DNA of 64,000 bases, taken from the IMG/VR virus record IMGVR_UViG_3300031957_002643, positions 124,001 to 188,000 of that record; one strand, written 5' to 3'. Of the stretch, positions 2,765 to 61,651 are shown one piece after another. The stretch's first letter is position 1. Each line of letters starts with the position of its first letter. The notes below the pieces were generated by a model. That model did not search any database. It was given only the letters and a program-made list of their open reading frames with translations, and was not told the origin of the DNA. Both the position numbers and the translations under genes were made by a program.

Positions 2765-2914
2765 TCTAAATTAATGACTGCCGATACCAGTCAGTTACTA
2801 CTCGCTGCTTATCAGCATGACCGCAACCAAGGTGCTGCTCGGGTCCAAGGAACGAATTCCTCTTGATCTTTAACGACCATGGGACATATGCATGGTCAGG
2901 GATATTTATATGAC

Positions 2915-2944
2915 AAAGCCCCAAGGCTTTCGCCAAGGGGCTTT
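2915..2944. terminator. Hairpin terminator downstream of the tmRNA
   Basis: AAAGCCCC...GGGGCTTT stem with an internal hairpin, flanked by A/T runs. Confidence 0.7.
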
Positions 2945-3237
2945 TTCTGTTTCGAGGGTTGTCAGACCCCAAGTGGCTTACGCAGCGATGCGAGCCTCAA
3001 CGGCAAAATCATTATCATTTGCAGTTATTTAAGTTGTGCCTATAACGGGCCACACCCGGCAATCTCAACTTCGCTAATACACACCCATCGATCCTATTTC
3101 GCCCCCATCAGCAGCACATACTGTCGCCATGTTCGCTACGCCGGTCATGACCAAACCTTAAAGTATGTGCTGTTGGTGGAGGCGTCGGGTACTGCCCCCG
3201 AGTCTGGTCTGCTGTTCGCTCCGCATCATCAATTACA
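2945..3237 (-). ncRNA. ssrA: Permuted two-piece tmRNA (alphaproteobacterial type), tag ANDNDFAVEARIAA
   Basis: Acceptor piece ending GACTCGGGGGCAGTACCCGACGCCTCCACCA (CCA at 3174) comes first, then an intervening 11-bp hairpin, then the coding piece starting GGGGGCGAAATAGGATCGA (3106). Tag frame 3022..2978. TTGACA-17-TATAAG promoter at 3272..3244. Confidence 0.95.
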
Positions 3238-3268
3238 AATATACTTATAAGGGTTACCGATTCAAATG

Positions 3269-17975: not shown

Positions 17976-18524
17976 ATGAGCAGCGTCACATTTTATTATG
18001 GATCAAAACTAAAACCAGTCGATTTCAATGATCCATCTTCACTCCGTTTCAACAACGGAAGCGTGTTCTTCACATCATTGAAAGAAGCAGTTGAAAGTCA
18101 TCTATGGCCGAAGGGCTTTCTCTATCATTGTGAAATTGAAACGATAAAAAGAAATCGCCGCCTCAAAGAAGACAGCGAACCAGATGGTAACAGAATGTTG
18201 GAACTGATGCGATCCGCTCCAAAATATGAGCGGACCATCAAAACAAAATTTTCTGGAAATGAAAAAATTGCTTATGCCATGATTATGGACAAGAGCAGAA
18301 CTGGTGCCATCGTTGATCTAATCAGAACAACTTTTTACGATACACACAACGTGGAATTTTGTAATGCAATGGTAGAGATCGGTTACGATGGATATTATGG
18401 AAAATTCCATCCACCAGCAAACTTCCACACGGATAGAGAGAAGTTCTATTATGCGCGTCTCTTCGATTTTGACCGCATTAGAGTGATCAAAACCGAAGAG
18501 ATCAACGCAAGTATCAGTGGCTAG
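17976..18524 (+). CDS. Hypothetical protein, possible ADP-ribosyltransferase-like fold
   Basis: FYYGS...GSVFFT..KEA pattern. Confidence 0.5.
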   Translation: MSSVTFYYGSKLKPVDFNDPSSLRFNNGSVFFTSLKEAVESHLWPKGFLYHCEIETIKRNRRLKEDSEPDGNRMLELMRSAPKYERTIKTKFSGNEKIAYAMIMDKSRTGAIVDLIRTTFYDTHNVEFCNAMVEIGYDGYYGKFHPPANFHTDREKFYYARLFDFDRIRVIKTEEINASISG

Positions 18525-19027
18525 TCAAAGATCGGTTTGTTGAACAGATCGATTGCACGACGAGCAGTTGATGCCAGACGGTAGCGAGTCTGTTCGCCCG
18601 ATTTAGTGTTCGATGTCGAAACACTGATGATTTCGACCGGAACATTGTTTTGGTCCGTGAAACCGGCTTTCACTGCACGATCACGGAAGGCGTTCACGAC
18701 ACCTTCGATTGCAGCGGTATTCAATTCACGATCAAACCCTTTTAGGGAAAGAGATCGTTTTGCCGGATGAAGGTCACGCAGAACACGCTTCATCATCGGT
18801 GTCAGAGAACAAAGCAGGGTATTTGCTTGTTCCAGACTCGGTTCATTCTTGAATTCATTGGGGAGATCACTTGAACCGAAAAGAAGCGCAAAATGCTTTT
18901 CAGCACGCCGGGCAAGAGAAGTTTCATCATGAACGATGATAGAAGTGGGATGGGTTTCAGCCAGTTTCTTCAGAGTAGAAACATCGGAAGAACGAATGAT
19001 AACGGCAGGCATTGATTTCTCCTTCAT
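18521..19027 (-). CDS. Hypothetical protein
   Basis: ORF track. Confidence 0.7.
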   Translation of the reverse strand: MKEKSMPAVIIRSSDVSTLKKLAETHPTSIIVHDETSLARRAEKHFALLFGSSDLPNEFKNEPSLEQANTLLCSLTPMMKRVLRDLHPAKRSLSLKGFDRELNTAAIEGVVNAFRDRAVKAGFTDQNNVPVEIISVSTSNTKSGEQTRYRLASTARRAIDLFNKPIFD

Positions 19028-19109: not shown

Positions 19110-19778
19110 ATGAAACTCGAAATTAGACCCGGTGAAGGTGGTGAAGATTCTCGCCTCTTCATGAAGGACCTCGCATCAGCATACACGAAACTATTTTCCC
19201 GTTTCGGTTGAAAGTGGGACCGCACTGATCATGACAACATGATCATCCTTTATGTAACCAAGACGGACAAACGGTTGCATAATGAATCGGGCGGTCATCG
19301 TATCCAACGTATACCTCCAACTGAAAAACGTGGGCGTGTTCATACGTCAACGGTCACTGTAGCTGTGCTTGAAGACATCAAATCTGATCCAAGATATGAC
19401 ATGCGTGATGAAGAACACTTTTACAAAGAATGGTTTTCAGGAACCGGCAATGGTGGTCAACATCGCAACAAGCATCAAAACTCACTGCGATTATATCATA
19501 CACCAACGGGCTTGTTGACCACAGAACAAGGAAAAAGTCGTACATCGAATGAAGCAACCGCAATGAAGCGGATGAATAAGATGCTCGATGAGATGAAGTA
19601 TGGTGCATCTCAGAACGATTTGAACGATGATCGTCAATCAAAAATTGGTTCCGGTATGCGTGCTGACAAGATACGCACTTATCGTTTCCAAGACGATCAG
19701 GTCAATGATCACCAGACAGGAAAGAAAACAACTTGCAAACGAATTATGAGGGGGCACTTTGATGATCTTTGGAAATAA
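19110..19778 (+). CDS. Class I peptide chain release factor, RF1-type (PxT), lacking domain 1, with in-frame TGA at 19209..19211
   Basis: AGAGGA SD, then MKLEIRPGEGGEDSRLF...SRFG*KW continuing in the same frame into ESGGHRIQRIPPTEKRGRVHTST, GNGGQHRNK and KIRTYRF. Confidence 0.9.
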
Positions 19779-20279: not shown

Positions 20280-20663
20280 ATGAAACTTCAAGACCTATTC
20301 GAACGCATTGGTGAACAATTATATATCAAAAATCCTTCTTCTAGGAAACTTCAATCATATTTGAATGACAGGGCTGAAGGATTTGCTCGCGCCATTGTTG
20401 ATACTGATGGGAATTTTTACGTTTTCAATCCATATGAAATGATTCACATCGAATTCAGAAAAAGAATGGGCATCTTCATGGGTAAGGATGATCTCAGTGG
20501 AATTTCATTATATGCATTCAAAGATACCTTGGCTTGCCGATTGGACGATGTTGGTGATGAGGAGGTTCATCCCGAAATGACAAGACGTGTCAGGGCAAAC
20601 AAAAATATTGTTCGGGCTTATGGTGAAGATGTCACTTGTATCGATATTCACGGTGATCCCTGA
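20280..20663 (+). CDS. Hypothetical protein (MKLQDLFE N-terminus)
   Basis: ORF with ATAAATA 5 nt upstream. Confidence 0.75.
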   Translation: MKLQDLFERIGEQLYIKNPSSRKLQSYLNDRAEGFARAIVDTDGNFYVFNPYEMIHIEFRKRMGIFMGKDDLSGISLYAFKDTLACRLDDVGDEEVHPEMTRRVRANKNIVRAYGEDVTCIDIHGDP

Positions 20664-20998
20664 TTCAAAATTCGATCAGCAGGAACATGCGATGTTAAAA
20701 ATTCATGTTCACTGATATGCCAACTGTTGCAACAATCCTTTTTTGGGCATCGGTATATTGCTGGAATGATTTTTTCGATTTCGATTTCGATTTCCAAAAT
20801 CACGTGTGGCCAATCTGAACCTGCTTGGGTTCGAATGATGTATTCGACATCATCTGTTAGCCACACATATGGTGATTTGGGATAGTATGATAGCGGTGCG
20901 GTTAAACCATAAAAATCTGGATTGATCAATTTTGGAAAAATGCCATTTTCCAAAATTGAAGACAAATTCTCTGGTGGGGTGATATGATACAGGCGCAT
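20648..20998 (-). CDS. ADP-ribosyltransferase/Tpt1-like fold protein
   Basis: RLYHIT..NL.SIL..GI.P, VWLT, ILEI. Confidence 0.6.
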   Translation of the reverse strand: MRLYHITPPENLSSILENGIFPKLINPDFYGLTAPLSYYPKSPYVWLTDDVEYIIRTQAGSDWPHVILEIEIEIEKIIPAIYRCPKKDCCNSWHISEHEFLTSHVPADRILNQGSP

Positions 20999-21011
20999 AT
21001 TGTCTTATAAC

Positions 21012-21958
21012 TGAAGAAGCCCTCAGACACAAGGTCCAAGGGCTTCTAAAGCTTGGCCACATGCTATCCTTACAGACCCGCATGTACTCTTTTGAAAGCC
21101 TGAGATTAAGGCTTCTAACGATGACCTTTGGACCGCACCGAAGCCCTTGCGAGGCTTGTTAATCCGTTATCCACAAATTGGTGTCACCACTCAACTTGTA
21201 TTCACCAGTGCTGCCTTTTTTGAGGTGTGGCCTTTCACCTGTCACGCTGTGCTATTCGTCAGACTTTGATCCACCTGCCTTGCGAGCAGTTCGAGGTTGC
21301 AGCCCCTATGAACTCCGTTCTAACAATCATCTTTGGCTTGCGGCCTCCGATGAACCCTGTTCCTTACTAGGCAGGGTATTAAGCACTTTTCACACAACGC
21401 CGAACCAGTCTTTGCGTTTTATCTTCTGAGAAGGGGTTGAACCTTCGACAGATCGCTTTGAATGCGATTGCTCTACCACTGAGCTATCAGTAACCTACCT
21501 CGATGTGCTGGTCCTGTTGCTTCGCTACCTGTTGGTAACAAAATACAACACACCGACTGTCGTTCACCCGCTAAGGCTAATAAACCAAACTTCTGGATTA
21601 GTCATCACCACCAAAGTGATGCCGTCACCCATTGTTTTGCGAACCGCCCTTACCCGCTAAGGCTCGAACCTGTCCACTATCCGTTAACCATCACATTCAA
21701 CCGTTTAGCATGTGAATCTGCGGGTGCTAACCGCACAGGTCTCGGTGTTACCCAAACCTTCATCACCGGTCTTACTGCTTAGCGCATCCATGGCTGAATA
21801 CGCGCCCTAATAGGCTTGGCTCGGACTTGTATAGCTGAACCATTGCTGGCGCGAGTATGTAGGAATTCCCGCTTTGGGCTGGTTACCCAGCTTATTCTTA
21901 ATGGACGCTATACCGCCCAAACTCTTATTTCATTTCCCAGTGGCCGTAACCACATCGT
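21012..21958 (-). ncRNA. Large structured ncRNA, GOLLD-like, with an embedded tRNA-like domain
   Basis: ~950 nt without a credible ORF; TTTACA-17-TATATA promoter at 21994..21966; many minus-strand hairpins with GTAA/GCAA loops; 3' hairpin at about 21016..21046. Confidence 0.65.
21422..21493 (-). tRNA. tRNA-like element with UCA (opal-reading) anticodon; imperfect acceptor stem, no CCA
   Basis: TA-GCTC-AGTGGTA-GAGC, ATCGC-ATTCAAA-GCGAT, GAAGG-TTCAACC-CCTTC. Confidence 0.75.
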
Positions 21959-21975
21959 GAAAACATATATAAGGG

Positions 21976-22932
21976 TCATTTTTCAGTTTGTAAAGCGCTT
22001 TTTTCATTTTCTTCAGTTTTTTTGCGACGATCAAAATCTGCATGTCTTTTCAAATCTTCCGCAAGCTTGATGCAATCGGATGCAGACCGAATAACCTCAG
22101 ACATTTCAGTGATATAGCGAATATAATCATCCACTTCGCCATTATGCAGTGCATCACGATCCAACTTGTCAACCGGATGCCATTCCATAAAACGTTCATG
22201 ATCATACACATTACGAACCATTGCCTCAATGGGTGTTGTTCCGTGATGGTTGGTCTGATATTTCAGCGACACCAGCATTCGAATGATCTTATCGAGCCGG
22301 TCGCGATCACCACGATAGATGCGACCAGTATTCATACAATCCCATTCAGGAGAATCGAACCACAAGCCAATTTCGCGGATCAGTTCTTCACCAGTGCATT
22401 CATCGTCAGAATACGGTGCTGAAGTCTTTGCTTTGATTTCATCCATCGAAACTGGCTGTTGGGCGATCTTCAGGATTTCACCATCGATGAAATGAAGCGC
22501 CTCCTGTTCGGTTCCAAATTCGATATCATTGTCATCTTCATCTTTAGCGGTTACCCACCGTGCAGTTCGAGCCGACACATACCGAACAAGATATTTGTCA
22601 TTTGATGCGACAATACTTGCATCGAAGATTCCTTCACCGCGATATTCGAACCGGTGTTCTGCGAGCAGTGCCAGCTTTTCAGAATAGTATTCAGATGCGG
22701 CATCCGCCGTTTCAAACCACATTGTTTGACCAGTATTGTCAACCACAAGGGAATCCGGGTTGTTATTATCACCACCACGAACACGAATATTTTTGTGATT
22801 GGAAAGAAACCATGTCTTTTCTTCACCACGCCGACGACGAGAAGTGCTTTGAACAACCTTGGCATAACAAATGCCAAGATGTGTATGAACTGGTGTAGCC
22901 AGTTGGAATGAGGTCGTAAGCATCTTATCCAT
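21976..22932 (-). CDS. Hypothetical protein
   Basis: 318-aa ORF with SD. Confidence 0.75.
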   Translation of the reverse strand: MDKMLTTSFQLATPVHTHLGICYAKVVQSTSRRRRGEEKTWFLSNHKNIRVRGGDNNNPDSLVVDNTGQTMWFETADAASEYYSEKLALLAEHRFEYRGEGIFDASIVASNDKYLVRYVSARTARWVTAKDEDDNDIEFGTEQEALHFIDGEILKIAQQPVSMDEIKAKTSAPYSDDECTGEELIREIGLWFDSPEWDCMNTGRIYRGDRDRLDKIIRMLVSLKYQTNHHGTTPIEAMVRNVYDHERFMEWHPVDKLDRDALHNGEVDDYIRYITEMSEVIRSASDCIKLAEDLKRHADFDRRKKTEENEKSALQTEK

Positions 22933-23092: not shown

Positions 23093-23275
23093 CTAATCAT
23101 TGTTCGTTGCTCTATGGTGATATCCCTGACGGAAGGCAGAGATCAGGGCAGATTTGATTTGCCATACTGCCAGACCATGAAAGTCCAACTCATCGGACCC
23201 GCGAGTTTCCAGCGTTTCCACATCCAACAATTGTTTGGCAATACCTTCTGCCATTTGTTCTTCAGTTTTCATCAC
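23093..23275 (-). CDS. Small protein, DUF6900-like
   Basis: IAKQLLDVETLETRGSDELDFHGLAVWQIKSAL. Confidence 0.65.
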   Translation of the reverse strand: MMKTEEQMAEGIAKQLLDVETLETRGSDELDFHGLAVWQIKSALISAFRQGYHHRATNND

Positions 23276-23278
23276 ATC

Positions 23279-24211
23279 TTATCCTTTCACCAGTTCTTTG
23301 AACGTTGCTTCCGAAATGCGTTGACCATCAACATAGATCAGAGCAGGCCATTGGACATACGGGTTACCAAGCTTGGACGTGCCGTACTTGATATTTTGAA
23401 CAACCGTGATGACCTTGCCGGTATTCGTGGTGCCGGACAGCTTGAAGATGAAGGTGTGCGGATCGACATGATCCAGAGTGACATCATCCAGATCAACCAG
23501 CTTCAGAGCCAGCTTTTCGACAAAGGCGGTGACTTGATCTTCGGCATACTGGTTAGCCAGCTTCGTCAGACGTTCTTCATCAATTTCCATCGGCTCGGAA
23601 ATCCCGTAGGATGAAGCGCCACTGACAGGACGAAGATGATTGCGAACGAAAGACCAGCGCTTGCTGTCATACGAACCATAAGGCATGCGAGCAAGCTTGG
23701 TCCAATTGCTTTCGTACTTTTTGACCATATTTTCGAAACCGAAGCGAACTTGTTCGATATAGTCTTGGGCGATGCCCGGCTTCAGGATTTCGAATTCAGC
23801 AGCAATGTTCGTAATTTCAGAGCGTTCACGGATCACCGCTTCCTGCTGAGCTTTGGTCGGCTTCTTCACGACTTCCATATCTTTGATCTGATTGCGAAGT
23901 TCGACCAGTTTCAGGACAGTAGTGTGGCGATCCGTGTTGCCCATGAAGCAAACATCATGCTTCCGGTCACGGTACTGGTGAAGATCGAACGGGAGATCGA
24001 CCTTCTTGCGCATACCAGCATAGTAGAGATCAATGTCGTCGCCAGCAGCGGCACGGATACGATCACGCATTTCGTCTTCCGCGTCCTTGCGAATAAACGC
24101 ATAGGCACGGTTCAGGCCGTCAAGGACATTCTTCTGGGCGGACTTCGTTTCGAAGTGATCGGCTTCCAGAGCGGCGGTAGCTTGATTGATGTAATCTTGA
24201 GCGGTGCGCAT
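23279..24211 (-). CDS. Hypothetical protein
   Basis: Preceded by promoter cassette copy 2. Confidence 0.8.
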   Translation of the reverse strand: MRTAQDYINQATAALEADHFETKSAQKNVLDGLNRAYAFIRKDAEDEMRDRIRAAAGDDIDLYYAGMRKKVDLPFDLHQYRDRKHDVCFMGNTDRHTTVLKLVELRNQIKDMEVVKKPTKAQQEAVIRERSEITNIAAEFEILKPGIAQDYIEQVRFGFENMVKKYESNWTKLARMPYGSYDSKRWSFVRNHLRPVSGASSYGISEPMEIDEERLTKLANQYAEDQVTAFVEKLALKLVDLDDVTLDHVDPHTFIFKLSGTTNTGKVITVVQNIKYGTSKLGNPYVQWPALIYVDGQRISEATFKELVKG

Positions 24212-24284: not shown

Positions 24285-24620
24285 TTATGTAATATCTTCA
24301 TCAATATTCATCGCCCCACCTTGTTTCTCAAAGTAATCGGCAAGCTCATTCAGATGAATCGCGATGATGCGGGCGCGAGCAGGCGAAAGAGTAACGGGTG
24401 TGATTTCAGATTCACCGGGCTTCAACATCAGTCCCAATGTGATACAATCATCCCACAAATGATCAAATCGCATGCATGGTCCAACAATAACGCGGCGGTG
24501 CTCATCATTTGGAGTAGCGCGCACAGCACGAGTGTTATATTGATAGATGTTCATTCCTGCGCGCTTCAACAATTTGTTGAGCTTACGCTGTGCCATCCAA
24601 TTTTTGATTTTCTTGAACAT
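24285..24620 (-). CDS. Hypothetical protein
   Basis: ORF in operon. Confidence 0.6.
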   Translation of the reverse strand: MFKKIKNWMAQRKLNKLLKRAGMNIYQYNTRAVRATPNDEHRRVIVGPCMRFDHLWDDCITLGLMLKPGESEITPVTLSPARARIIAIHLNELADYFEKQGGAMNIDEDIT

Positions 24621-24623
24621 AAT

Positions 24624-25055
24624 TTAATCCTCGATAATTGGTTTTGCGGTGATGTCGAACTTCACACCTTCTTTATTTGCAGTGTACATCATTTCGAACA
24701 TCGGAATTCGCATGTATTTGGAAAGAAGCTGCATGTACAGCCCCATGAACAATTCTCCATGGCCGGGATCATCGCTTCCGTTATCCATGTCCATAAGAAG
24801 TGAGTGCGTCACTTCATGGATTACTGTTTGAGTCGAAACGACCGGAGAAAGATGAATTACCGAACGGCACGCATTACCGGCCCATTTTCTCGTTTGTTTC
24901 GGAATTTCACGAACGGCAGGCGGAAATTCATATCCTTCTTCTTTCCAAATATATTCCACCAATGCGCGAGCTTGATCGAGGCTAACGAATTGCCCTTGGG
25001 GGACAAATTCATGTTGCCAGTCATAAACCCTTTGTCTTTGAAAATCCCGGCACAT
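24624..25055 (-). CDS. SprT-like zinc metallopeptidase
   Basis: VIHEVTH (HExxH) and GHGELF. Confidence 0.75.
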   Translation of the reverse strand: MCRDFQRQRVYDWQHEFVPQGQFVSLDQARALVEYIWKEEGYEFPPAVREIPKQTRKWAGNACRSVIHLSPVVSTQTVIHEVTHSLLMDMDNGSDDPGHGELFMGLYMQLLSKYMRIPMFEMMYTANKEGVKFDITAKPIIED

Positions 25056-25834
25056 CAGAGATAACCCGCAACATTATTGGAGGACGATGAAACCCCACCA
25101 TTGAGATTCATCCGAGAACCCGCACTCTTGCCTTGGACGTATGCATCATAGTTATTTGCGGAACGAGAAGCCGTGCGCGTGATCAGGCCATTCGGAGTAT
25201 TTTTGTCTTCATTGAATTCTTGTTGGACCAGTGCTTCTTTCAGAACAACGAGATCGGTGCCCGGCGTTGCCAGTTCGCGGCGACGACGCTCTTCCCGTTC
25301 GACAACTTCATCCTTCATTTCATCCAGACGGGACGTGATCCGGTCGATAAAACCACGTTGGAAACTGGTGGAGGCCCGACGACGACCACCACGTTCCATC
25401 GCAGCATCAGCGTAATCACGAGACCGCTTGAAGGCTTCGGTTTCGTTTTCCATCGTGTTGTTGATCAGGTGGTACATGTATTCCGCAATCGCAACATCTT
25501 GTTCCTGACCATAAAAATGGTAAGAAACTTCTTTCGTGCGATAGCTATTGCTGTGTCGGGATTGCCACACAATACAGTCAGCAAATCGACCAAGCGTAAC
25601 AATAATCCATTGCATGGAATTCGCAGACTTGCGGCCTGTGGGAATAGTGAGATGCTTGCACTTCTGCTCACGAAGCGAAACTTCATCCATCGTGAGATTG
25701 TATTGTTCGAGCAGATCACCGACCTTATTCATGGCGGCGATAGCTTCAGCTTCAGTACAACCACGATTGGTGGTCTTGGACATCAGGGCGCGAATACGAT
25801 CAGCAGCCTTTTGACGTTCGGTAGTGTTAGCCAT
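25055..25834 (-). CDS. DUF2786 domain protein
   Basis: RIRALMSKT...TEAEAIAAMNKVGDLLEQYNL; preceded by cassette copy 3. Confidence 0.8.
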   Translation of the reverse strand: MANTTERQKAADRIRALMSKTTNRGCTEAEAIAAMNKVGDLLEQYNLTMDEVSLREQKCKHLTIPTGRKSANSMQWIIVTLGRFADCIVWQSRHSNSYRTKEVSYHFYGQEQDVAIAEYMYHLINNTMENETEAFKRSRDYADAAMERGGRRRASTSFQRGFIDRITSRLDEMKDEVVEREERRRRELATPGTDLVVLKEALVQQEFNEDKNTPNGLITRTASRSANNYDAYVQGKSAGSRMNLNGGVSSSSNNVAGYL

Positions 25835-26165: not shown

Positions 26166-26260
26166 TGGCTCCCATCTGAGGTATCGAACCTCACCCGCGT
26201 CTCATCAACGCAGACCTCCGGTTAACAGCCGGGTACCTTCACCGTGCCAGTCCGATGGGA
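26166..26260 (-). tRNA. trnN: tRNA-Asn(GTT) with long variable arm
   Basis: CCCGG-CTGTTAA-CCGGA, ~24-nt variable region, 7-bp acceptor, GCCA. Confidence 0.8.
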
Positions 26261-54965: not shown

Positions 54966-56984
54966 TTACTGGTTTCGACCAAGCATCTCACCGAACAGGG
55001 TCGCGGCATTTTCCGTCGAACCCGATCCCATCAGCAGAACTTCAGGGACATTGATCGATCCCAGAACTTCCGGGTTGTCACGAAGGACACCAAGAACGTC
55101 TTGGACGATTGCACGTTGGAAGTCCAGTTGGAGTTCCAGTTCGCGAAGTTCTTGCACGCGGTCTTCACCCAGAACTCGTGCCTGAGTAAGCTGACCAGCA
55201 GCCAGTTCTTCGAGATAGTTACGGTCAGCCGATGCGCGGCGTGCGCGGGTCTGCTCGTAAACTTCAGCGGCAACCACTTCGGCTTGCTGATCAGCCGTTG
55301 CACGCTGTTGTTCAGTTGCGATACGAGCACGCTGGGCACGTTCTTCCTGAACAAAGGTGGTTTCAAGCTGAGAAGCAACTTGGTTACGTTGCGGTGCGAT
55401 CAGCAGTTCAGGCGGAACTGCCGGATCGCCCATCGTGACTTCCAGAATGGTGAGACCCGAAGTCGTAGAACCATTCATGACCGCGTAGGAGATTTCTGCT
55501 TCGATAGAAGCACGGTTCTGAGAGAAGTCCAGAGCGCGCGTCGGACGATAAGCGTAGGCTTGAGTGCCAGCAGATTGCATCACCGGTTGATCATTCTGAT
55601 CGCGCAGATACGGGTGAGGCATGTCGCGTTCGAACAGAACCGCTTCACACACTTCCGTGCTGCCTTCCATGTGACACATATCGTCAACCGGTGCATAGAT
55701 ACGACCGCCCCCGATATTGCGAACGCGAGAGCGGATCATCGGAGTGATGATACGATCTTCGACTTCGTTCAGATCACCAACAGCAGCCACGATAGCCGGT
55801 GCTTGTTCAGCGGTGACTTGTGCCATGACACGAAGTTCCACCGGAATATCCCAACCTTCGGCAATAACATTGATTGCACGATCAGCGGCATGAGACGGGA
55901 CCGGAACTTGCTGACAAGTACGAGTGCCTTGTTGGATTTCACCTTCCGGGGTCACATCCAGCGGAATACGGCAGCGTTCAAAACCACCATTGTATTCGAA
56001 GCGCTGGGCACGAGTTTCAATCAGCGTGATATCATAGATCAGCGGATTGATCATATAGGAACCCGGAGTCAGCGGACGTTCCCAGACACCCTTGCAACCA
56101 ACCGGTACCAGAGTTGCAGTCAAATCGCCCTGCGAAACTTCACGCACTTGGTTACAGTTGTTGTTCCAACCTTCATCGATGTTCGAACGAACAACACCAA
56201 CGAAACCAGTCGGAATAACGGTGGTCACGGTCGGAGTACGATCCAGACCGGCGATATCACGCGGATCGTCAGTGTATCCATCGGAATTGTAGTAGCCGAC
56301 AAGATTGCCGCCAGCATCCGTGATACGAACATTGAACAGATAAAGGTTGATACGATGCGTACCCGGAAGCAGTGGAGTCGATTGTAGACCCTTGCGACCA
56401 CCGAGTCCACCTTCAGCCAGCGGAGTCAGGAATGCCGTAGCATCGAAAACATTCTGGCCAGTCGTGGCGCGTGTGGGACGTTGTTCATCACCACGAGCCG
56501 GAATAGAACCAGAAATTGCAGTACCCGGAAGCGGCGGTGCAGCGATTGCATCTTCAGAAAGCGGCTGACCATCAACAGCGACCAGCACACCGTAATGGTC
56601 TGCCGGAACCGTGACGACCGGAAGCATTTCGAAATCGCCCCACAGACCCATCAGTGGTTCAACATGGAGTCCGGGTCCCCAGATGTGGGCATTCGGACCT
56701 TGTTGATTGGCCAGAGCGATGATTTGGCCATCGCGCATGGAATTACCGAAATAGGTACGGGTATAATGGCCCGTTTGATCATCAGGAACAACGATGATCG
56801 AGGTTGTCCATGCACCGAGAACGAAAAAGAGAGCACCGGCGACTGTGGTCCCCGCACGAACGGCCCATCGATATGAACCGGCAAAACCACCGAGTGCCAG
56901 ACCGGCAATAGCCAGTACAACACCGAAGGTCATAAGGATAATAGAACCCATTAATTTCTCCATAGGTTGGTGACCCAATGTCAC
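54966..56984 (-). CDS. SPFH/band-7 (flotillin-like) membrane protein
   Basis: Two N-terminal transmembrane helices, repeated G..G......PG.Y..NP motifs, VEDRIITPMIRSRVRN, coiled-coil tail. Confidence 0.8.
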   Translation of the reverse strand: MTLGHQPMEKLMGSIILMTFGVVLAIAGLALGGFAGSYRWAVRAGTTVAGALFFVLGAWTTSIIVVPDDQTGHYTRTYFGNSMRDGQIIALANQQGPNAHIWGPGLHVEPLMGLWGDFEMLPVVTVPADHYGVLVAVDGQPLSEDAIAAPPLPGTAISGSIPARGDEQRPTRATTGQNVFDATAFLTPLAEGGLGGRKGLQSTPLLPGTHRINLYLFNVRITDAGGNLVGYYNSDGYTDDPRDIAGLDRTPTVTTVIPTGFVGVVRSNIDEGWNNNCNQVREVSQGDLTATLVPVGCKGVWERPLTPGSYMINPLIYDITLIETRAQRFEYNGGFERCRIPLDVTPEGEIQQGTRTCQQVPVPSHAADRAINVIAEGWDIPVELRVMAQVTAEQAPAIVAAVGDLNEVEDRIITPMIRSRVRNIGGGRIYAPVDDMCHMEGSTEVCEAVLFERDMPHPYLRDQNDQPVMQSAGTQAYAYRPTRALDFSQNRASIEAEISYAVMNGSTTSGLTILEVTMGDPAVPPELLIAPQRNQVASQLETTFVQEERAQRARIATEQQRATADQQAEVVAAEVYEQTRARRASADRNYLEELAAGQLTQARVLGEDRVQELRELELQLDFQRAIVQDVLGVLRDNPEVLGSINVPEVLLMGSGSTENAATLFGEMLGRNQ

Positions 56985-57497: not shown

Positions 57498-57998
57498 TTA
57501 GATCAACACAAAGCCTTTGTATGGCTTTCCGAGGATTTCGCAGGCTTTGTCGAAATCCTCCATCATGATCCCATTCTGAGAACTGGTCTGCACATGATGA
57601 TCTTCAACGCCCTTGACACTGGCATCGTCAATCACACACCAATGCGTGATGTTCTCATGATACTCATCACGAAGCATTTTTAAGTGCTTGTGAATTGCAT
57701 CACCGCGATCATCGCAACCCGGATAAGTCGTGACCCATTCGGGGTACAGGTCTTCAGAGATATCATATCCAACACGCATGAAGCGATCACGAATATGATC
57801 TTCTCCGTATGCACCATGTGTGGAATTGATAACGACCTTACAACCAGTCCATTCACAAATGGTGCGAACTGCATGACAGGCGGACTGGTCGAAGAACTCC
57901 ATGAACGAACCTGCTTCGTGATGCATCTCTGAAGGAAGCCACAACAGATTTCGACCAGTGTTCACAACACCATCGATATCCAAAAACAAAATTTTCAT
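57498..57998 (-). CDS. HAD-family phosphatase (Swiss-army-knife RNA repair HAD type)
   Basis: ILFLDIDGVVN, VINST, CVIDD. Confidence 0.85.
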   Translation of the reverse strand: MKILFLDIDGVVNTGRNLLWLPSEMHHEAGSFMEFFDQSACHAVRTICEWTGCKVVINSTHGAYGEDHIRDRFMRVGYDISEDLYPEWVTTYPGCDDRGDAIHKHLKMLRDEYHENITHWCVIDDASVKGVEDHHVQTSSQNGIMMEDFDKACEILGKPYKGFVLI

Positions 57999-58119
57999 AC
58001 ACATAACTCCATGTAACTCATATTACACGGAAAATATGAATGTGTCAATACTGTTGACAATCAAATTAAAACCTGATATACAGTGTTCATTGTCAAGTTC
58101 ATACATGGAAAGGAACTTT

Positions 58120-58656
58120 ATGAGCAACAATGTTTTTGGTCTCGTCCCCGAACGCAAGACCTACGTCGCAATCGATGGCGTCAATCTTCATGCGGCACTC
58201 CGCAATGAGGAAGGGACTATCGATTTCAAGAAAATGCGGGAAGACTGTGAAATCGAATGTGACTATATCAACTTCGGTTACTTTACCGGCGTTGCTGATG
58301 ATGAAGATGGTCACAATCCGATCAAGCCTCTTATCGACTTCCTGTCGTTCAATGGCTTCGAACTGCACACCAAGCCGCTGAACAAGTTCACCACCAATGA
58401 TGGTCGTACTATCGTCAAGGGCAATACCGATGTCGATCTCGCTGTCAAGGTCATGGAAATGGCATGGAACGGTGCCTGTGAACATCTCGTGCTGTTTTCT
58501 GGAAACAACGAGTTTTCTCCCCTCGTCAAAGCGCTGCGTTCTCGTGGTATTCGAGTCAGTATCGTTTCCGGTGAAGGCGTTGTGGGCGAATCTCTGCGTG
58601 CTTCTGCGAACGAATTCATCAACGTGAAAGAAGTTCTCGCGGACTTCAAACGTTAA
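58120..58656 (+). CDS. NYN/LabA (DUF88) PIN-like domain protein with altered acidic motif
   Basis: IDGVNL, KGNTDVDLA, LFSGNNEF, RSRGIRV. Confidence 0.85.
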   Translation: MSNNVFGLVPERKTYVAIDGVNLHAALRNEEGTIDFKKMREDCEIECDYINFGYFTGVADDEDGHNPIKPLIDFLSFNGFELHTKPLNKFTTNDGRTIVKGNTDVDLAVKVMEMAWNGACEHLVLFSGNNEFSPLVKALRSRGIRVSIVSGEGVVGESLRASANEFINVKEVLADFKR

Positions 58657-59658: not shown

Positions 59659-59952
59659 GTGGGTGTGGCGAAATGGTAGACGCGACAGACTTATAGTGAT
59701 TGAGTGCTCTCTTAGAAATAGGAGATGTAGAACTGCTCAAATTCGGGGAAACCTGTAAAATGGCAATCCCGAGCCAAGCTTTCCTGAAAAGGATTGAAGG
59801 TGTAGAGACTAGACGGGCAGCATCTAAGTTGGGAAACCAATATGATGAAGGGATAGTCCAGACTACAAACCGTAATGGGCAGCGAAAGCTGTAGTTAGTA
59901 CGAAAATCTGTTTCCTTATGGAGTGGGGGTTCGAGTCCCCCCACCCACACCA
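59659..59952 (+). tRNA. trnL: tRNA-Leu(TAA), interrupted (exons 59659..59692 and 59903..59952)
   Basis: Spliced anticodon arm ACAGA-CTTAAAA-TCTGT; acceptor GTGGGTG/CACCCAC; ACCA. Confidence 0.95.
59693..59902 (+). mobile_element. Group I intron (IC3/trnL-type), 210 nt, no ORF
   Basis: 5' exon ends in U and intron ends in G; core elements AATTCGGGGAAACC, AATCCCGAGC, GTAGAGACTAGA, GAAGGGATAGTCC. Confidence 0.93.
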
Positions 59953-60007: not shown

Positions 60008-60514
60008 GTGTACAATATGGAATTAGAAAATATATTTAAAAGACGTGGTTATACTAAGCAAGAATTTATTACTGCTGTTGAAACTTCATTTAGTAAAAGA
60101 CAGGTCTTACATAAATTAAATCTTGTAGAAGCTGGTGGGAATTATAAAGTATTTGATCGTGCTGTGAAAGAGCTTGGGTTGGATACTTCACATTTTAAAG
60201 GCCAAGGTTATCTTTCAGGCAAAACTCATGATTGGTCCAAAAAGATTCCTATACAAGACATTCTGATTGAAAATTCAACGTATACCTCTTCATTCAATCT
60301 TAAAAATAGGCTATTATCAGAAGGACTTTTAATAGAACAATGTTCCAAATGCGGTATCAGTGATGAATGGCAGGGAGAACATTTATCATTGCATTTGGAA
60401 CACAAGAATGGTATAAACAATGATCACAGGATAGAAAATTTGACACTTCTCTGTCCTAATTGCCATTCACAAACCAAAAGCTACTGTGGTAGGAACAAAG
60501 GCAAATACAAATGA
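60008..60514 (+). CDS. HNH homing endonuclease, paralog of 14625..15098
   Basis: CSKCG, LHLEHKNGINNDHRIENLTLLCPNCHSQT. Confidence 0.9.
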   Translation: MYNMELENIFKRRGYTKQEFITAVETSFSKRQVLHKLNLVEAGGNYKVFDRAVKELGLDTSHFKGQGYLSGKTHDWSKKIPIQDILIENSTYTSSFNLKNRLLSEGLLIEQCSKCGISDEWQGEHLSLHLEHKNGINNDHRIENLTLLCPNCHSQTKSYCGRNKGKYK

Positions 60515-60792: not shown

Positions 60793-61342
60793 AAATTATG
60801 TTTCCAAAATGAGGCGATGGTTCAAGGATAGTGGTCGAAAGAATGGCCACATTCCCAGTTTTGCATGGGATGACCTAACCATCTTCAAATTGGAGAGATG
60901 CAAGAAATGGAAATCCCATAGGAAAAGAAAGCATAAAAGTAATTTTGAGTAGCAATCTTCCACATTCATATGAAATTTCAATTTCATCTCATCCTTCTAT
61001 CTTTTCTATAAAAGGAGAAGAAACGATACATGTCAATGGAATTCAATTTATCGTTGATGAAGGCTGGTATGTCAAAAATGTTGGACCATTTAAAACAAAG
61101 AATGATTCAATAGCTTATTATATGGCGGTTATTTACTGATGGGTGTTTCAACTTTACAAGACAAAGATTGTATGTTAGTTTATATCGGTGATGACTTGAA
61201 AGAATTCATGACGGTTTCAACTTATGCTTCTCTTTATAAGATCGATGCCGAATATGTTCGTGAAGAGCTTCGCAAAAACCATATGATGAAACATGAAGGC
61301 CGATTATTGAAGCCGGGTATCTTTTTCAAATGAGTTAGTACC

Positions 61343-61651
61343 ATGGTTGCTTACAAACCACATCACAGAATTCCAGAATGTTGGAAACCGAGATACGATC
61401 AAACGTATAAAGAGATGCGTCGTGCTGACGAGGGCATCACCATGTTTTCATGTCTTTATTCATTGTTGGCCGGTGGTGGTCGTAGATCGGCATCATGGCT
61501 CAATTCTTCCAAATTGGGTTCCCGCGCTCTCAAGAAAGGGTACATCTATTATACACGTGAAGGTGGCGGGTGGAAATGTAATAGAACAATTGTGCACTTG
61601 ACCGACAAGGGCAGAGATTATGTATTGAATAGATTGAAGAAACTGAAATGA
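61343..61651 (+). CDS. Hypothetical protein, possible winged-helix C-terminus
   Basis: VHLTDKGRDYV. Confidence 0.6.
   Translation: MVAYKPHHRIPECWKPRYDQTYKEMRRADEGITMFSCLYSLLAGGGRRSASWLNSSKLGSRALKKGYIYYTREGGGWKCNRTIVHLTDKGRDYVLNRLKKLK

What the first reader, a model, noticed from the sequence alone, without database searches (positions are those of the whole stretch)
21012..21958. ~950-nt highly structured non-coding RNA, GOLLD-like
Seen: sigma70 promoter at 21994..21966, no credible ORF, and minus-strand hairpins GCTGG-GTAA-CCAGC, ACCCTG..GTAA..CAGGGT, two YTC-GCAA-GG, two AGCCTTAGCGGGT repeats and GAAGCCT..AGGCTTT, ending in a GAAGCCCT/AGGGCTTC hairpin. G-U pairs favour the minus strand. 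Established: GOLLD RNAs are ~800-nt phage-associated RNAs found near tRNA genes. Family identity is an inference from size and context.
Basis: partly seen in the sequence, partly recalled or inferred. Interest (0 to 1): 0.8.

Follow-up and report, generated by a model that had tools for sequence, protein, structure and literature searches.

The report
GOLLD giant RNA in a jumbo phage
The stretch is a genuine GOLLD RNA gene, a known family of about 800-900-nt phage RNAs that assemble into hollow RNA cages, found here in an uncultured marine jumbo phage and carrying a tRNA-like insert with a stop-codon (UCA) anticodon.

Summary
The observation and the interpretation both hold. Rfam's GOLLD model (RF02032) matches the minus strand at 21556..21097 over its full length, at 177.4 bits against a gathering score of 150 (E=3e-48).

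The roughly 400 nt upstream (21958..21557) are a GOLLD 5' domain. They share a conserved element with 59 of 114 other GOLLD loci from IMG/VR.

The GOLLD linker holds a tRNA-like module (21493..21422) with anticodon UCA. It has no encoded CCA, whereas all 18 other Rfam-called tRNAs of the window encode CCA.

A salt-marsh metatranscriptome holds an 841-nt contig about 90% identical to 21894..21052, with nothing laid on the flanking genes. A close relative is therefore present in RNA libraries as one long RNA.

The window is identical over the shared 7.5 kb to part of a 335-kb IMG/VR contig, so this is a jumbo myophage; its alpha-type tmRNA suggests an alphaproteobacterial host.

By analogy with solved GOLLD structures (12-mer and 14-mer cages), the RNA most likely self-assembles into a cage with the tRNA-like linker inside. 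Its biological role is still unknown.

Verdict: a new member of a known kind. The promoter and terminator calls are weak.

The parts
21966..21994 (-). Promoter-like site TTTACA-17 nt-TATATA, unverified. It overlaps the TGA stop (21978..21976) of the upstream 318-aa ORF.
   Evidence: Read. Not called by the consensus scan, because the -10 hexamer lacks the final T. No transcript 5' end was mapped: the RNA-library contigs reach only 21906.
21922..21958 (-). Presumed 5' leader with a small GUGG-UUACGG-CCAC hairpin. It is not conserved in relatives.
   Evidence: The alignment A4 shows that this part is variable.
21557..21921 (-). GOLLD 5' domain. Conserved helices include GGGCG/CGUCC (21918..21903), GCUGG-GUAA-CCAGC (21891..21878), GCGG../..CGC (21872..21851) and GCCA/UGGU (21850..21839). 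The centre, about 21817..21691, is specific to this RNA.
   Evidence: 59 of 114 IMG/VR GOLLD loci share the element at the same distance from the 3' domain. Across 52 sequences, 15 of 17 pairs covary, 97% of cells are paired, and 0 of 500 shuffles reach this. In the whole-domain consensus the window forms 14 of about 25 helices.
21497..21556 (-). First hairpin of the conserved 3' domain (Rfam model positions 1-62; P14 in the published numbering).
   Evidence: It carries the invariant GUGUUGUAUU...CAGCACAUC motif used to fetch relatives.
21422..21493 (-). tRNA-like module in the GOLLD linker, 72 nt, anticodon UCA (complementary to UGA). The T-loop, D-loop and anticodon loop are canonical. The acceptor stem has U1.G72 and an A3xA70 mismatch. 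No CCA is encoded.
   Evidence: Rfam tRNA 55 bits. ARAGORN reports 'tRNA-SeC (tca)'. Comparison with the 18 other Rfam-called window tRNAs, all of which encode CCA.
21097..21421 (-). Rest of the GOLLD 3' domain (Rfam model positions about 126-416). It includes the ACCCUG/CAGGGU hairpin, the GCAA-loop hairpins and the closing GAAGCCU-UAAUCUC-AGGCUU hairpin.
   Evidence: Full-length cmscan alignment, 177.4 bits, not truncated.
21015..21085 (-). 3' tail with two hairpins: ACAUGC...GCAUGU at 21085..21059, and a 14-bp hairpin at 21048..21015 containing GAAGCCCU/AGGGCUUC. This is a possible terminator or 3' protective stem. The next ORF starts at 20998.
   Evidence: No U-run follows, and the scan did not call it. 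Relatives (Phosso, BL57) have classical terminators at the equivalent place.

Best explanation
Window 21958..21013 (minus strand) is the gene of a GOLLD RNA of an uncultured marine jumbo myophage.

Shown here: it has the complete conserved GOLLD 3' domain. It has a 5' domain homologous to that of many other phage GOLLDs. It has a tRNA-like module in the variable linker that follows the first 3'-domain hairpin. A relative about 90% identical occurs in RNA libraries as one contig of at least 841 nt covering all three parts.

Inferred from the solved structures of other GOLLDs (env-38 14-mer; S. agalactiae 12-mer): the RNA folds into two separate domains and self-assembles, without protein, into a closed dihedral cage held by kissing loops and A-minor contacts. 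The 5' domains form the caps and the 3' domains form the rings. The linker, here the tRNA-like module, points into the lumen, giving about 12-14 tethered tRNA-like bodies per cage.

Inferred from my family-wide comparison: the linker module is a tethered tRNA mimic rather than an ordinary tRNA gene. The elbow and anticodon loop are kept, but the acceptor end is degenerate and carries no CCA. The most likely role is in the phage's handling of the translation/tRNA machinery during infection, either by holding the tRNA-like bodies away from partners that recognise the tRNA elbow or anticodon, or by presenting them to such partners. That last step is speculative.
For: - Rfam GOLLD match at 177.4 bits (gathering score 150), model positions 1-416 of 416, E=3e-48.
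- The 5' element is shared with 59 of 114 IMG/VR GOLLD loci. Covariation: 97% of cells paired, 258 double-change cells against 84 in shuffles, 0 of 500 shuffles as good, and slid controls fall to 25-48% paired. The window forms 14 of about 25 consensus 5' helices.
- The fold z-score is -4.58.
- RNA-library contig X3 record 1 (841 nt, depth 44) lies on 21052..21894 from its first letter to its last, with 72 substitutions and 16 gaps. Depth is zero on 20600-21026 and 21942-22400.
- Context: 20 tRNA genes, a tmRNA and an RF1-like ORF lie in the window. The window is identical over the shared 7.5 kb to part of a 335,552-bp IMG/VR contig. A tail sheath gene is present.
- GOLLD with a tRNA-like element at the same linker site occurs in roseophages MD18 and DSS3_MAL1, Sinorhizobium phage Phosso and Caulobacter phage BL57.
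- Family-wide, only 3 of 75 linker tRNA-likes encode CCA, against 44 of 46 free tRNAs just downstream in the same loci. Acceptor pairing is mostly 4-6 of 7, against at least 6 of 7. The linker elements nevertheless keep GTTCRA (73 of 73), the D-loop GG (72 of 73) and U33 plus R37 (64 of 73).
- Literature: cage structures with the linker inside (PMC12286853, PMC12990946).
Against: - No structure, oligomer state or transcript ends were measured for this RNA.
- The transcript evidence comes from a relative, in assembled contigs of metatranscriptomes, which can contain DNA.
- The central part of the 5' domain (about 21817..21691) does not fit the family consensus, so the stoichiometry cannot be predicted.
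- The promoter and terminator are not canonical.
- The window's own tRNA-like module has a fairly good acceptor stem (6 of 7 pairs), so processing into a working tRNA is not excluded.
- The set of relatives was chosen by one sequence pattern and contains related sequences, so the family-wide counts are not independent events.
Confidence: 0.85

Rival explanations
1. The GOLLD RNA is a storage or release scaffold for a real opal-suppressor tRNA. The linker element is cut out by RNase P and 3' processing enzymes, receives CCA from the host enzyme, is charged, and reads UGA at a set stage of infection. This is the 'inhibited storage' idea in PMC12990946.
For: The cloverleaf is well formed: Rfam tRNA 55 bits, canonical U33, A37, T-loop and D-loop, and 6 of 7 acceptor pairs. 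Anticodon UCA is complementary to UGA. An RF1-type ORF lies 1.6 kb away (release factor 1 reads UAA/UAG, not UGA; established knowledge). Suppressor tRNAs and release factors are known phage cargo (own knowledge). One other linker element in IMG/VR has anticodon CUA.
Against: The phage uses TGA as an ordinary stop: 42 of 106 ORFs end in TGA, and large conserved genes are intact under the standard code. Only two same-frame ORF pairs are split by a single TGA, and none has a family match that would show read-through. The element is the only one of 19 Rfam-called window tRNAs without an encoded CCA, and it has A3xA70 and U1.G72. Family-wide, linker elements lack CCA and have degenerate acceptor stems. 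In M. aubagnense the embedded pseudo-tRNA gave no separate signal (PMC6582537). In the relative about 90% identical, the acceptor strands and the anticodon loop carry substitutions and indels. The RF1-like ORF is only the C-terminal half.
Confidence: 0.1
2. There is no single large RNA. Instead the stretch is a tRNA gene flanked by structured intergenic DNA, small RNAs or attenuators that happen to resemble GOLLD.
For: The promoter and terminator are not canonical, and the transcript ends are unmapped.
Against: The CM match is full-length and above the curated threshold. A homologous 5' domain sits at a fixed distance in dozens of phages. An 841-nt RNA-library contig spans the 5' domain, the tRNA-like module and the 3' domain.
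Confidence: 0.03
3. It is another class of large phage RNA (ROOL, a group I/II intron or a tmRNA-like RNA), or a protein-coding region read in the wrong code.
For: Size and tRNA-island context are shared with ROOL. The window does contain a group I intron and a tmRNA elsewhere.
Against: In an E<=1 scan of 20500-22500, only GOLLD, tRNA and one chance-level hit (sX14, 20.7 bits against a gathering score of 80) were found. There is no ORF longer than 84 aa. The standard code accounts for 86-88% coding coverage of the window.
Confidence: 0.02

Closest known systems
GOLLD RNA family (Rfam RF02032); env-38 marine GOLLD, 833 nt, 14-mer cage (PDB 9MEE, PMC12286853)
   Same: It has the full conserved 3' domain, a structured 5' domain of about 400 nt, and a variable linker after the first 3'-domain hairpin. 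It is of marine, phage origin and lies near tRNA genes. Its total length is about 0.85-0.95 kb.
   Different: The linker here is a 72-nt tRNA-like module, where env-38 has a short disordered loop of about 40 nt. The central 5' domain is idiosyncratic. The oligomer state is unknown.
GOLLDs with a tRNA or pseudo-tRNA in the linker: Mycobacterium/Mycolicibacterium tRNA-array GOLLDs (PMC6582537; PMC12990946 citing Morgado 2020); alphaproteobacterial phages MD18, DSS3_MAL1, Phosso and BL57
   Same: A tRNA-like element sits at the same linker position, within a tRNA island. The acceptor end is degenerate and lacks CCA.
   Different: The anticodon here is UCA, complementary to a stop codon. It is the only such case among 75 linker elements sampled; the others are mostly Asn GUU, Lys UUU/CUU and Arg UCU. 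In the roseophages a tmRNA follows the GOLLD directly, and in BL57 it lies adjacent on the opposite strand. Here the tmRNA is 18 kb away.
S. agalactiae GOLLD, 700 nt, 12-mer cage (PDB 9L0R; PMC12990946)
   Same: The 3'-domain fold family is the same, and the 5' domain acts as a cap.
   Different: The Sag RNA lacks several helices (P9, P11a-c, P21b). Which helices this RNA has could not be mapped without the full-length consensus.
ROOL RNA
   Same: It is a large phage RNA near tRNA islands that forms cages with an internal linker (PMC12286853).
   Different: It has an unrelated sequence and fold, and no Rfam match here.

Membership tests
GOLLD RNA (RF02032) | Conserved 3' domain matching the family covariance model at or above the curated gathering score | tested here: met
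   177.4 bits against 150, model positions 1-416 of 416, not truncated, minus strand 21556..21097.
GOLLD RNA (RF02032) | A large structured 5' domain (about 400 nt) upstream of the 3' domain, less conserved than the 3' domain | tested here: met
   Homology to 59 of 114 GOLLD loci at a fixed distance. Helices covary. The window forms 14 of about 25 consensus helices, with a variable centre.
GOLLD RNA (RF02032) | Variable linker after the first 3'-domain hairpin, sometimes holding a tRNA | tested here: met
   A tRNA-like module at 21493..21422 lies between model positions about 62 and 126. 75 of 127 sampled sites have one at the same place.
GOLLD RNA (RF02032) | Phage or prophage location, usually near tRNA genes | tested here: met
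   20 tRNAs and a tmRNA in the window. A tail sheath gene. A 335-kb IMG/VR viral contig identical over the shared 7.5 kb.
GOLLD RNA (RF02032) | Expressed as one long RNA | tested here: inconclusive
   An 841-nt metatranscriptome contig of a relative about 90% identical covers 21052..21894, with no coverage of the flanks. There is no RNA data for this exact phage, and the ends are unmapped.
GOLLD RNA (RF02032) | Protein-free self-assembly into a closed dihedral cage (12-14 chains) | not testable with these tools
   Known for env-38 and S. agalactiae GOLLD only (PMC12286853, PMC12990946).
ROOL RNA | Match to the ROOL covariance model | tested here: not met
   No ROOL hit at E<=1 in 20500-22500 or at the gathering score in the window.
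Functional tRNA (for the linker module) | Cloverleaf with canonical D-loop, T-loop and anticodon loop | tested here: met
   Rfam tRNA 55 bits against a gathering score of 29. U8, A14, GG, UUCAA, U33 and A37 were read.
Functional tRNA (for the linker module) | Intact 7-bp acceptor stem and a 3' CCA end like the phage's other tRNAs | tested here: not met
   U1.G72 and an A3xA70 mismatch, and the discriminator is followed by UAAAAC. All 18 other Rfam-called tRNAs in the window encode CCA. Post-transcriptional CCA addition cannot be excluded.
tRNA-Sec (ARAGORN's label) | Long variable arm and an extended acceptor/T stack (8+5 or 9+4) | tested here: not met
   The element is 72 nt, with a 5-nt variable region and a 7+5 layout. 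The label follows from the anticodon alone.

The most novel reading that the evidence does not exclude
GOLLD cages may be devices that display or sequester tethered tRNA mimics, not tRNA precursors. In most sampled family members the linker keeps a perfect tRNA elbow and anticodon loop but has lost the acceptor end and CCA. In this phage the mimic carries a stop-codon anticodon (UCA) and lies near a half-size RF1 gene. It could therefore act as a caged decoy or as a regulated reader of UGA. Possible targets are a host tRNA-directed defence, such as an anticodon nuclease, or termination at UGA late in infection.
Probability: 0.12. Interest if true: 0.75.

Novelty: new member of a known kind. 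Interest (0 to 1): 0.38.

Why it matters
GOLLD is one of the few natural RNAs known to build protein-free cages, and its function is still unknown. This example adds a marine jumbo-phage member whose linker is a compact, well-formed tRNA-like body with a stop-codon anticodon. That makes it a convenient construct for asking, by cryo-EM and processing assays, whether linker tRNAs are caged, released or used as mimics.

The side result matters too. Linker tRNA-likes almost never encode CCA (3 of 75), while free tRNAs next door almost always do (44 of 46). This constrains the published 'stored tRNA' hypotheses. The metatranscriptome data also show that GOLLD-family RNAs are present, some at high depth, in salt-marsh RNA libraries.

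Tried and rejected
- A near-identity search of 20 kb against INPHARED phages found no match. The distant search gave only GOLLD and tRNA-level hits.
- The upstream 318-aa ORF and the downstream 116-aa ORF have no Pfam, PHROG or NCBIfam family and no tblastn match in phages, so gene context gives no functional clue.
- A search for close relatives with the double AGCCTTAGCGGGT pattern returned three loci: the window's own contig (L127), one distant GOLLD (L126, linker anticodon UUG) and one metagenome contig (L128) with no blast similarity to the window and no GOLLD or tRNA hit. Conservation of the UCA anticodon in close relatives therefore could not be read.
- Stop-codon recoding was rejected: 42 of 106 ORFs end in TGA and coding coverage is normal under the standard code. 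The two ORF pairs split by one TGA (24321-24803 with 24804-25064; 61139-61333 with 61343-61651) have no family hits.
- The tRNA-Sec and tRNA-Trp(UCA) readings were rejected on structure and on the use of TGA as a stop. The module is not a copy of the phage's tRNA-Trp (58% identity).
- The original GOLLD paper (Weinberg 2009) and Morgado 2020 are not held. Their content is cited only through papers that quote them.
- Mapping the published P1-P27 numbering and the inter-chain contact loops onto this sequence was not possible without the full-length consensus or the env-38 sequence as a reference.

Full report
**What is there.** On the minus strand, between a 318-aa ORF (22932..21976, TGA stop) and a 116-aa ORF (20998..20648), lies about 960 nt without a credible ORF.

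A gathering-threshold Rfam scan of the whole window gives one match to GOLLD (RF02032). It lies at 21556..21097 on the minus strand, scores 177.4 bits against a curated threshold of 150, has E=3.3e-48, and covers model positions 1-416 of 416. A permissive scan of 20500-22500 adds only a tRNA inside the GOLLD match and one chance-level hit; there is no ROOL or other large-RNA family. The 947-nt RNA folds much better than its shuffles (z=-4.58).

**The 5' half.** Rfam models only the conserved 3' domain, so I tested the upstream 400 nt separately. A pattern taken from the first 3'-domain hairpin fetched 120 IMG/VR loci. In 59 of the 114 that have enough upstream sequence, blastn finds the window's 5' element (about 21935..21820) at the same distance from the 3' domain.

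- 97% of cells are paired, and 15 of 17 pairs have compensatory changes.
- There are 258 double-change cells, against 84 +/- 6 in shuffles (0 of 500 shuffles as good).
- Slid controls fall to 25-48% paired.

A whole-domain alignment with RNAalifold gives about 25 consensus helices. The window forms 14 of them, including a long-range ACAA/UUGU helix that ties the 5' domain to the start of the 3' domain. The centre (about 21817..21691) is specific to this RNA, as expected for the 'less conserved 5' region' of GOLLD (PMC12286853).

**The insert.** Between the first 3'-domain hairpin and the rest of the 3' domain lies a 72-nt tRNA-like element (21493..21422). It scores 55 bits on the Rfam tRNA model, and ARAGORN reports anticodon UCA and labels it 'SeC'. 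It has canonical D-, T- and anticodon loops. Its acceptor stem has U1.G72 and an A3xA70 mismatch, and it runs straight into the conserved GOLLD strand (A|UAAAACGCAAAGACUG) without CCA. All 18 other Rfam-called tRNAs in the window encode CCA, and 17 of them have 7 of 7 acceptor pairs. It is not tRNA-Sec (no long variable arm), and it is not a copy of the phage's tRNA-Trp.

A tRNA in the GOLLD linker is already known (PMC12286853; PMC12990946; pseudo-tRNA in M. aubagnense, PMC6582537). Among the 127 pattern sites, ARAGORN calls a tRNA at this exact place in 75. The anticodons are mostly Asn GUU (26), Lys UUU/CUU (19) and Arg UCU (4). UCA occurs only in the window, and CUA occurs once.

Within the same loci, the linker elements differ sharply from the free tRNAs just downstream:

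| Feature | Linker elements | Free tRNAs just downstream |
|---|---|---|
| CCA encoded | 3 of 75 | 44 of 46 |
| Acceptor pairing | mostly 4-6 of 7 | at least 6 of 7 in 44 of 46 |
| GTTCRA T-loop | 73 of 73 | 38 of 46 |
| D-loop GG | 72 of 73 | 39 of 46 |
| U33 plus R37 | 64 of 73 | 44 of 46 |

So the linker element looks like a tRNA body without a working acceptor end. Two caveats apply: one search pattern chose the sample, the rows are related to each other, and ARAGORN's ends may be off by a few bases.

**Expression.** The window comes from a seawater metagenome. Four salt-marsh metatranscriptomes hold related sequence. In X3, one 841-nt contig (depth 44) lies on 21052..21894 from its first letter to its last, with 72 substitutions and 16 gaps (about 90% identity). 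Shorter contigs of the same relative occur in X4 and X5. Nothing is laid on 20600-21026 or 21942-22400. Because the contig ends inside the predicted RNA, this is best read as a discrete RNA of at least 841 nt that spans the 5' domain, the tRNA-like module and the 3' domain. The tool warns that RNA libraries can hold DNA, and the exact ends are not mapped.

In that relative, the tRNA-like part carries changes in both acceptor strands, an A-to-U change at loop position 32, and a 1-nt insertion beside the anticodon stem. Part of the differences was not printed, so its anticodon is unknown. Other GOLLD-family contigs that match only the conserved hairpin reach depths of 66-105.

**Genome context.** The window is identical over 7.5 kb to IMGVR_UViG_3300031957_002643, a 335,552-bp contig. 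It encodes a tail sheath, and its structural proteins are distantly like those of the jumbo phages Phosso, Atu_ph07 and PA5oct. Nothing similar by DNA is in INPHARED.

The window holds 20 tRNA genes and an alphaproteobacterial-type permuted tmRNA, which points to an alphaproteobacterial host. GOLLDs with a tRNA-like linker also occur in roseophages MD18 and DSS3_MAL1 and in Phosso and Caulobacter phage BL57; the roseophage DSS3P8 has a GOLLD without one. In the roseophages and BL57 a phage tmRNA lies next to the GOLLD.

An ORF 1.6 kb away (19239..19778, plus strand) is the C-terminal half of an RF1-type release factor, with the PxT and GGQ motifs. It scores 151 bits on the prfA model, far below the full-length cutoff.

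The phage uses the standard genetic code: 42 of 106 ORFs end in TGA, and the large conserved genes are intact.

**How it most likely works.** Cryo-EM shows that GOLLD RNAs self-assemble without protein into closed cages. The marine env-38 RNA forms a 14-mer and S. agalactiae GOLLD forms a 12-mer. The 5' domains form the caps, the 3' domains form the rings, and the linker faces the lumen (PMC12286853, PMC12990946). This RNA has the full 3' domain and a family-type 5' domain, so the same behaviour is the best inference, with about a dozen tethered tRNA-like bodies inside. That is inference, not a result obtained here.

Function is unknown for the whole family. The published ideas are encapsulation and 'inhibited storage' of the embedded tRNA. 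My within-locus contrast (no CCA and weak acceptor stems, but intact elbows and anticodon loops) favours a tethered mimic over a tRNA precursor. For this particular element, with 6 of 7 acceptor pairs, release as an opal suppressor cannot be excluded, and I give it about 10%.

**Verdict.** This is a new member of a known family, ordinary for a specialist. It has two modest points of interest: the stop-codon anticodon in the linker module, and the family-wide acceptor-end decay. The promoter and terminator assignments are unproven.

Noticed in passing
window 19239-19778 (+): A 179-aa ORF that is the C-terminal half of an RF1-type release factor. It has PCRF and RF-1 domains, the PPT (PxT) and GGQ motifs, and matches prfA positions 168-334 of 347 at 151 bits, well below the full-length cutoff. 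The N-terminal domains are absent: the neighbouring ORFs (17976-18524 +, 18521-19027 -) match no family. The closest phage hits include 635-kb uncultured megaphages and gut phages.
   Followed up: partly
window 2887-3266 (-): A phage-encoded two-piece (permuted) alphaproteobacterial-type tmRNA with tag ANDNDFAVEARIAA. In the roseophages the tmRNA sits directly downstream of the GOLLD, and in Caulobacter phage BL57 it lies adjacent on the opposite strand. Here it is 18 kb away.
   Followed up: partly
window 9869-44981: There are 20 tRNA genes besides the GOLLD insert. All 18 Rfam-called ones encode 3' CCA. ARAGORN alone calls a 95-nt 'tRNA-Asn' at 26166-26260, next to a normal tRNA-Asn. It may carry an insertion or be a false call.
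   Followed up: no
window 59691-59875 (+) and 60008-60514 (+): A group I intron, just at the Rfam threshold (50.8 bits against 50), followed by an ORF with an HNH endonuclease domain. The interrupted host gene was not identified.
   Followed up: partly
window 23093-24211 (-): A 310-aa ORF and a 60-aa ORF lie in the same frame, separated by one TAA. The first matches the N-terminus of phrog_8776 and the second matches the C-terminus of phrog_2555. This may be a split or rearranged gene.
   Followed up: no
window 24321-25064 (+) and 61139-61651 (+): Two ORF pairs lie in the same frame, each separated by a single TGA (160+86 aa and 64+102 aa). They are the only formal candidates for UGA read-through in the window. 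None has a family match, so they are uninformative.
   Followed up: partly
L006-L125 (IMG/VR loci), linker after the first 3'-domain hairpin: Across sampled GOLLDs, 75 of 127 linkers hold an ARAGORN tRNA. The anticodons are dominated by Asn GUU and Lys UUU/CUU. Nearly all lack CCA and have weak acceptor stems, but their elbows are intact. Free tRNAs just downstream are normal.
   Followed up: partly
window 21534-21568 in runs X3-X6: Contigs of other GOLLD-family RNAs (550-760 nt) that match only the conserved first hairpin reach word depths of 66-105 in salt-marsh metatranscriptomes, so the family is abundant there.
   Followed up: no
window 57958-58656 (+) and 54966-56984 (-): An NYN-domain (RNase-like) protein and a 672-aa protein with an SPFH/Band 7 domain.
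   Followed up: no
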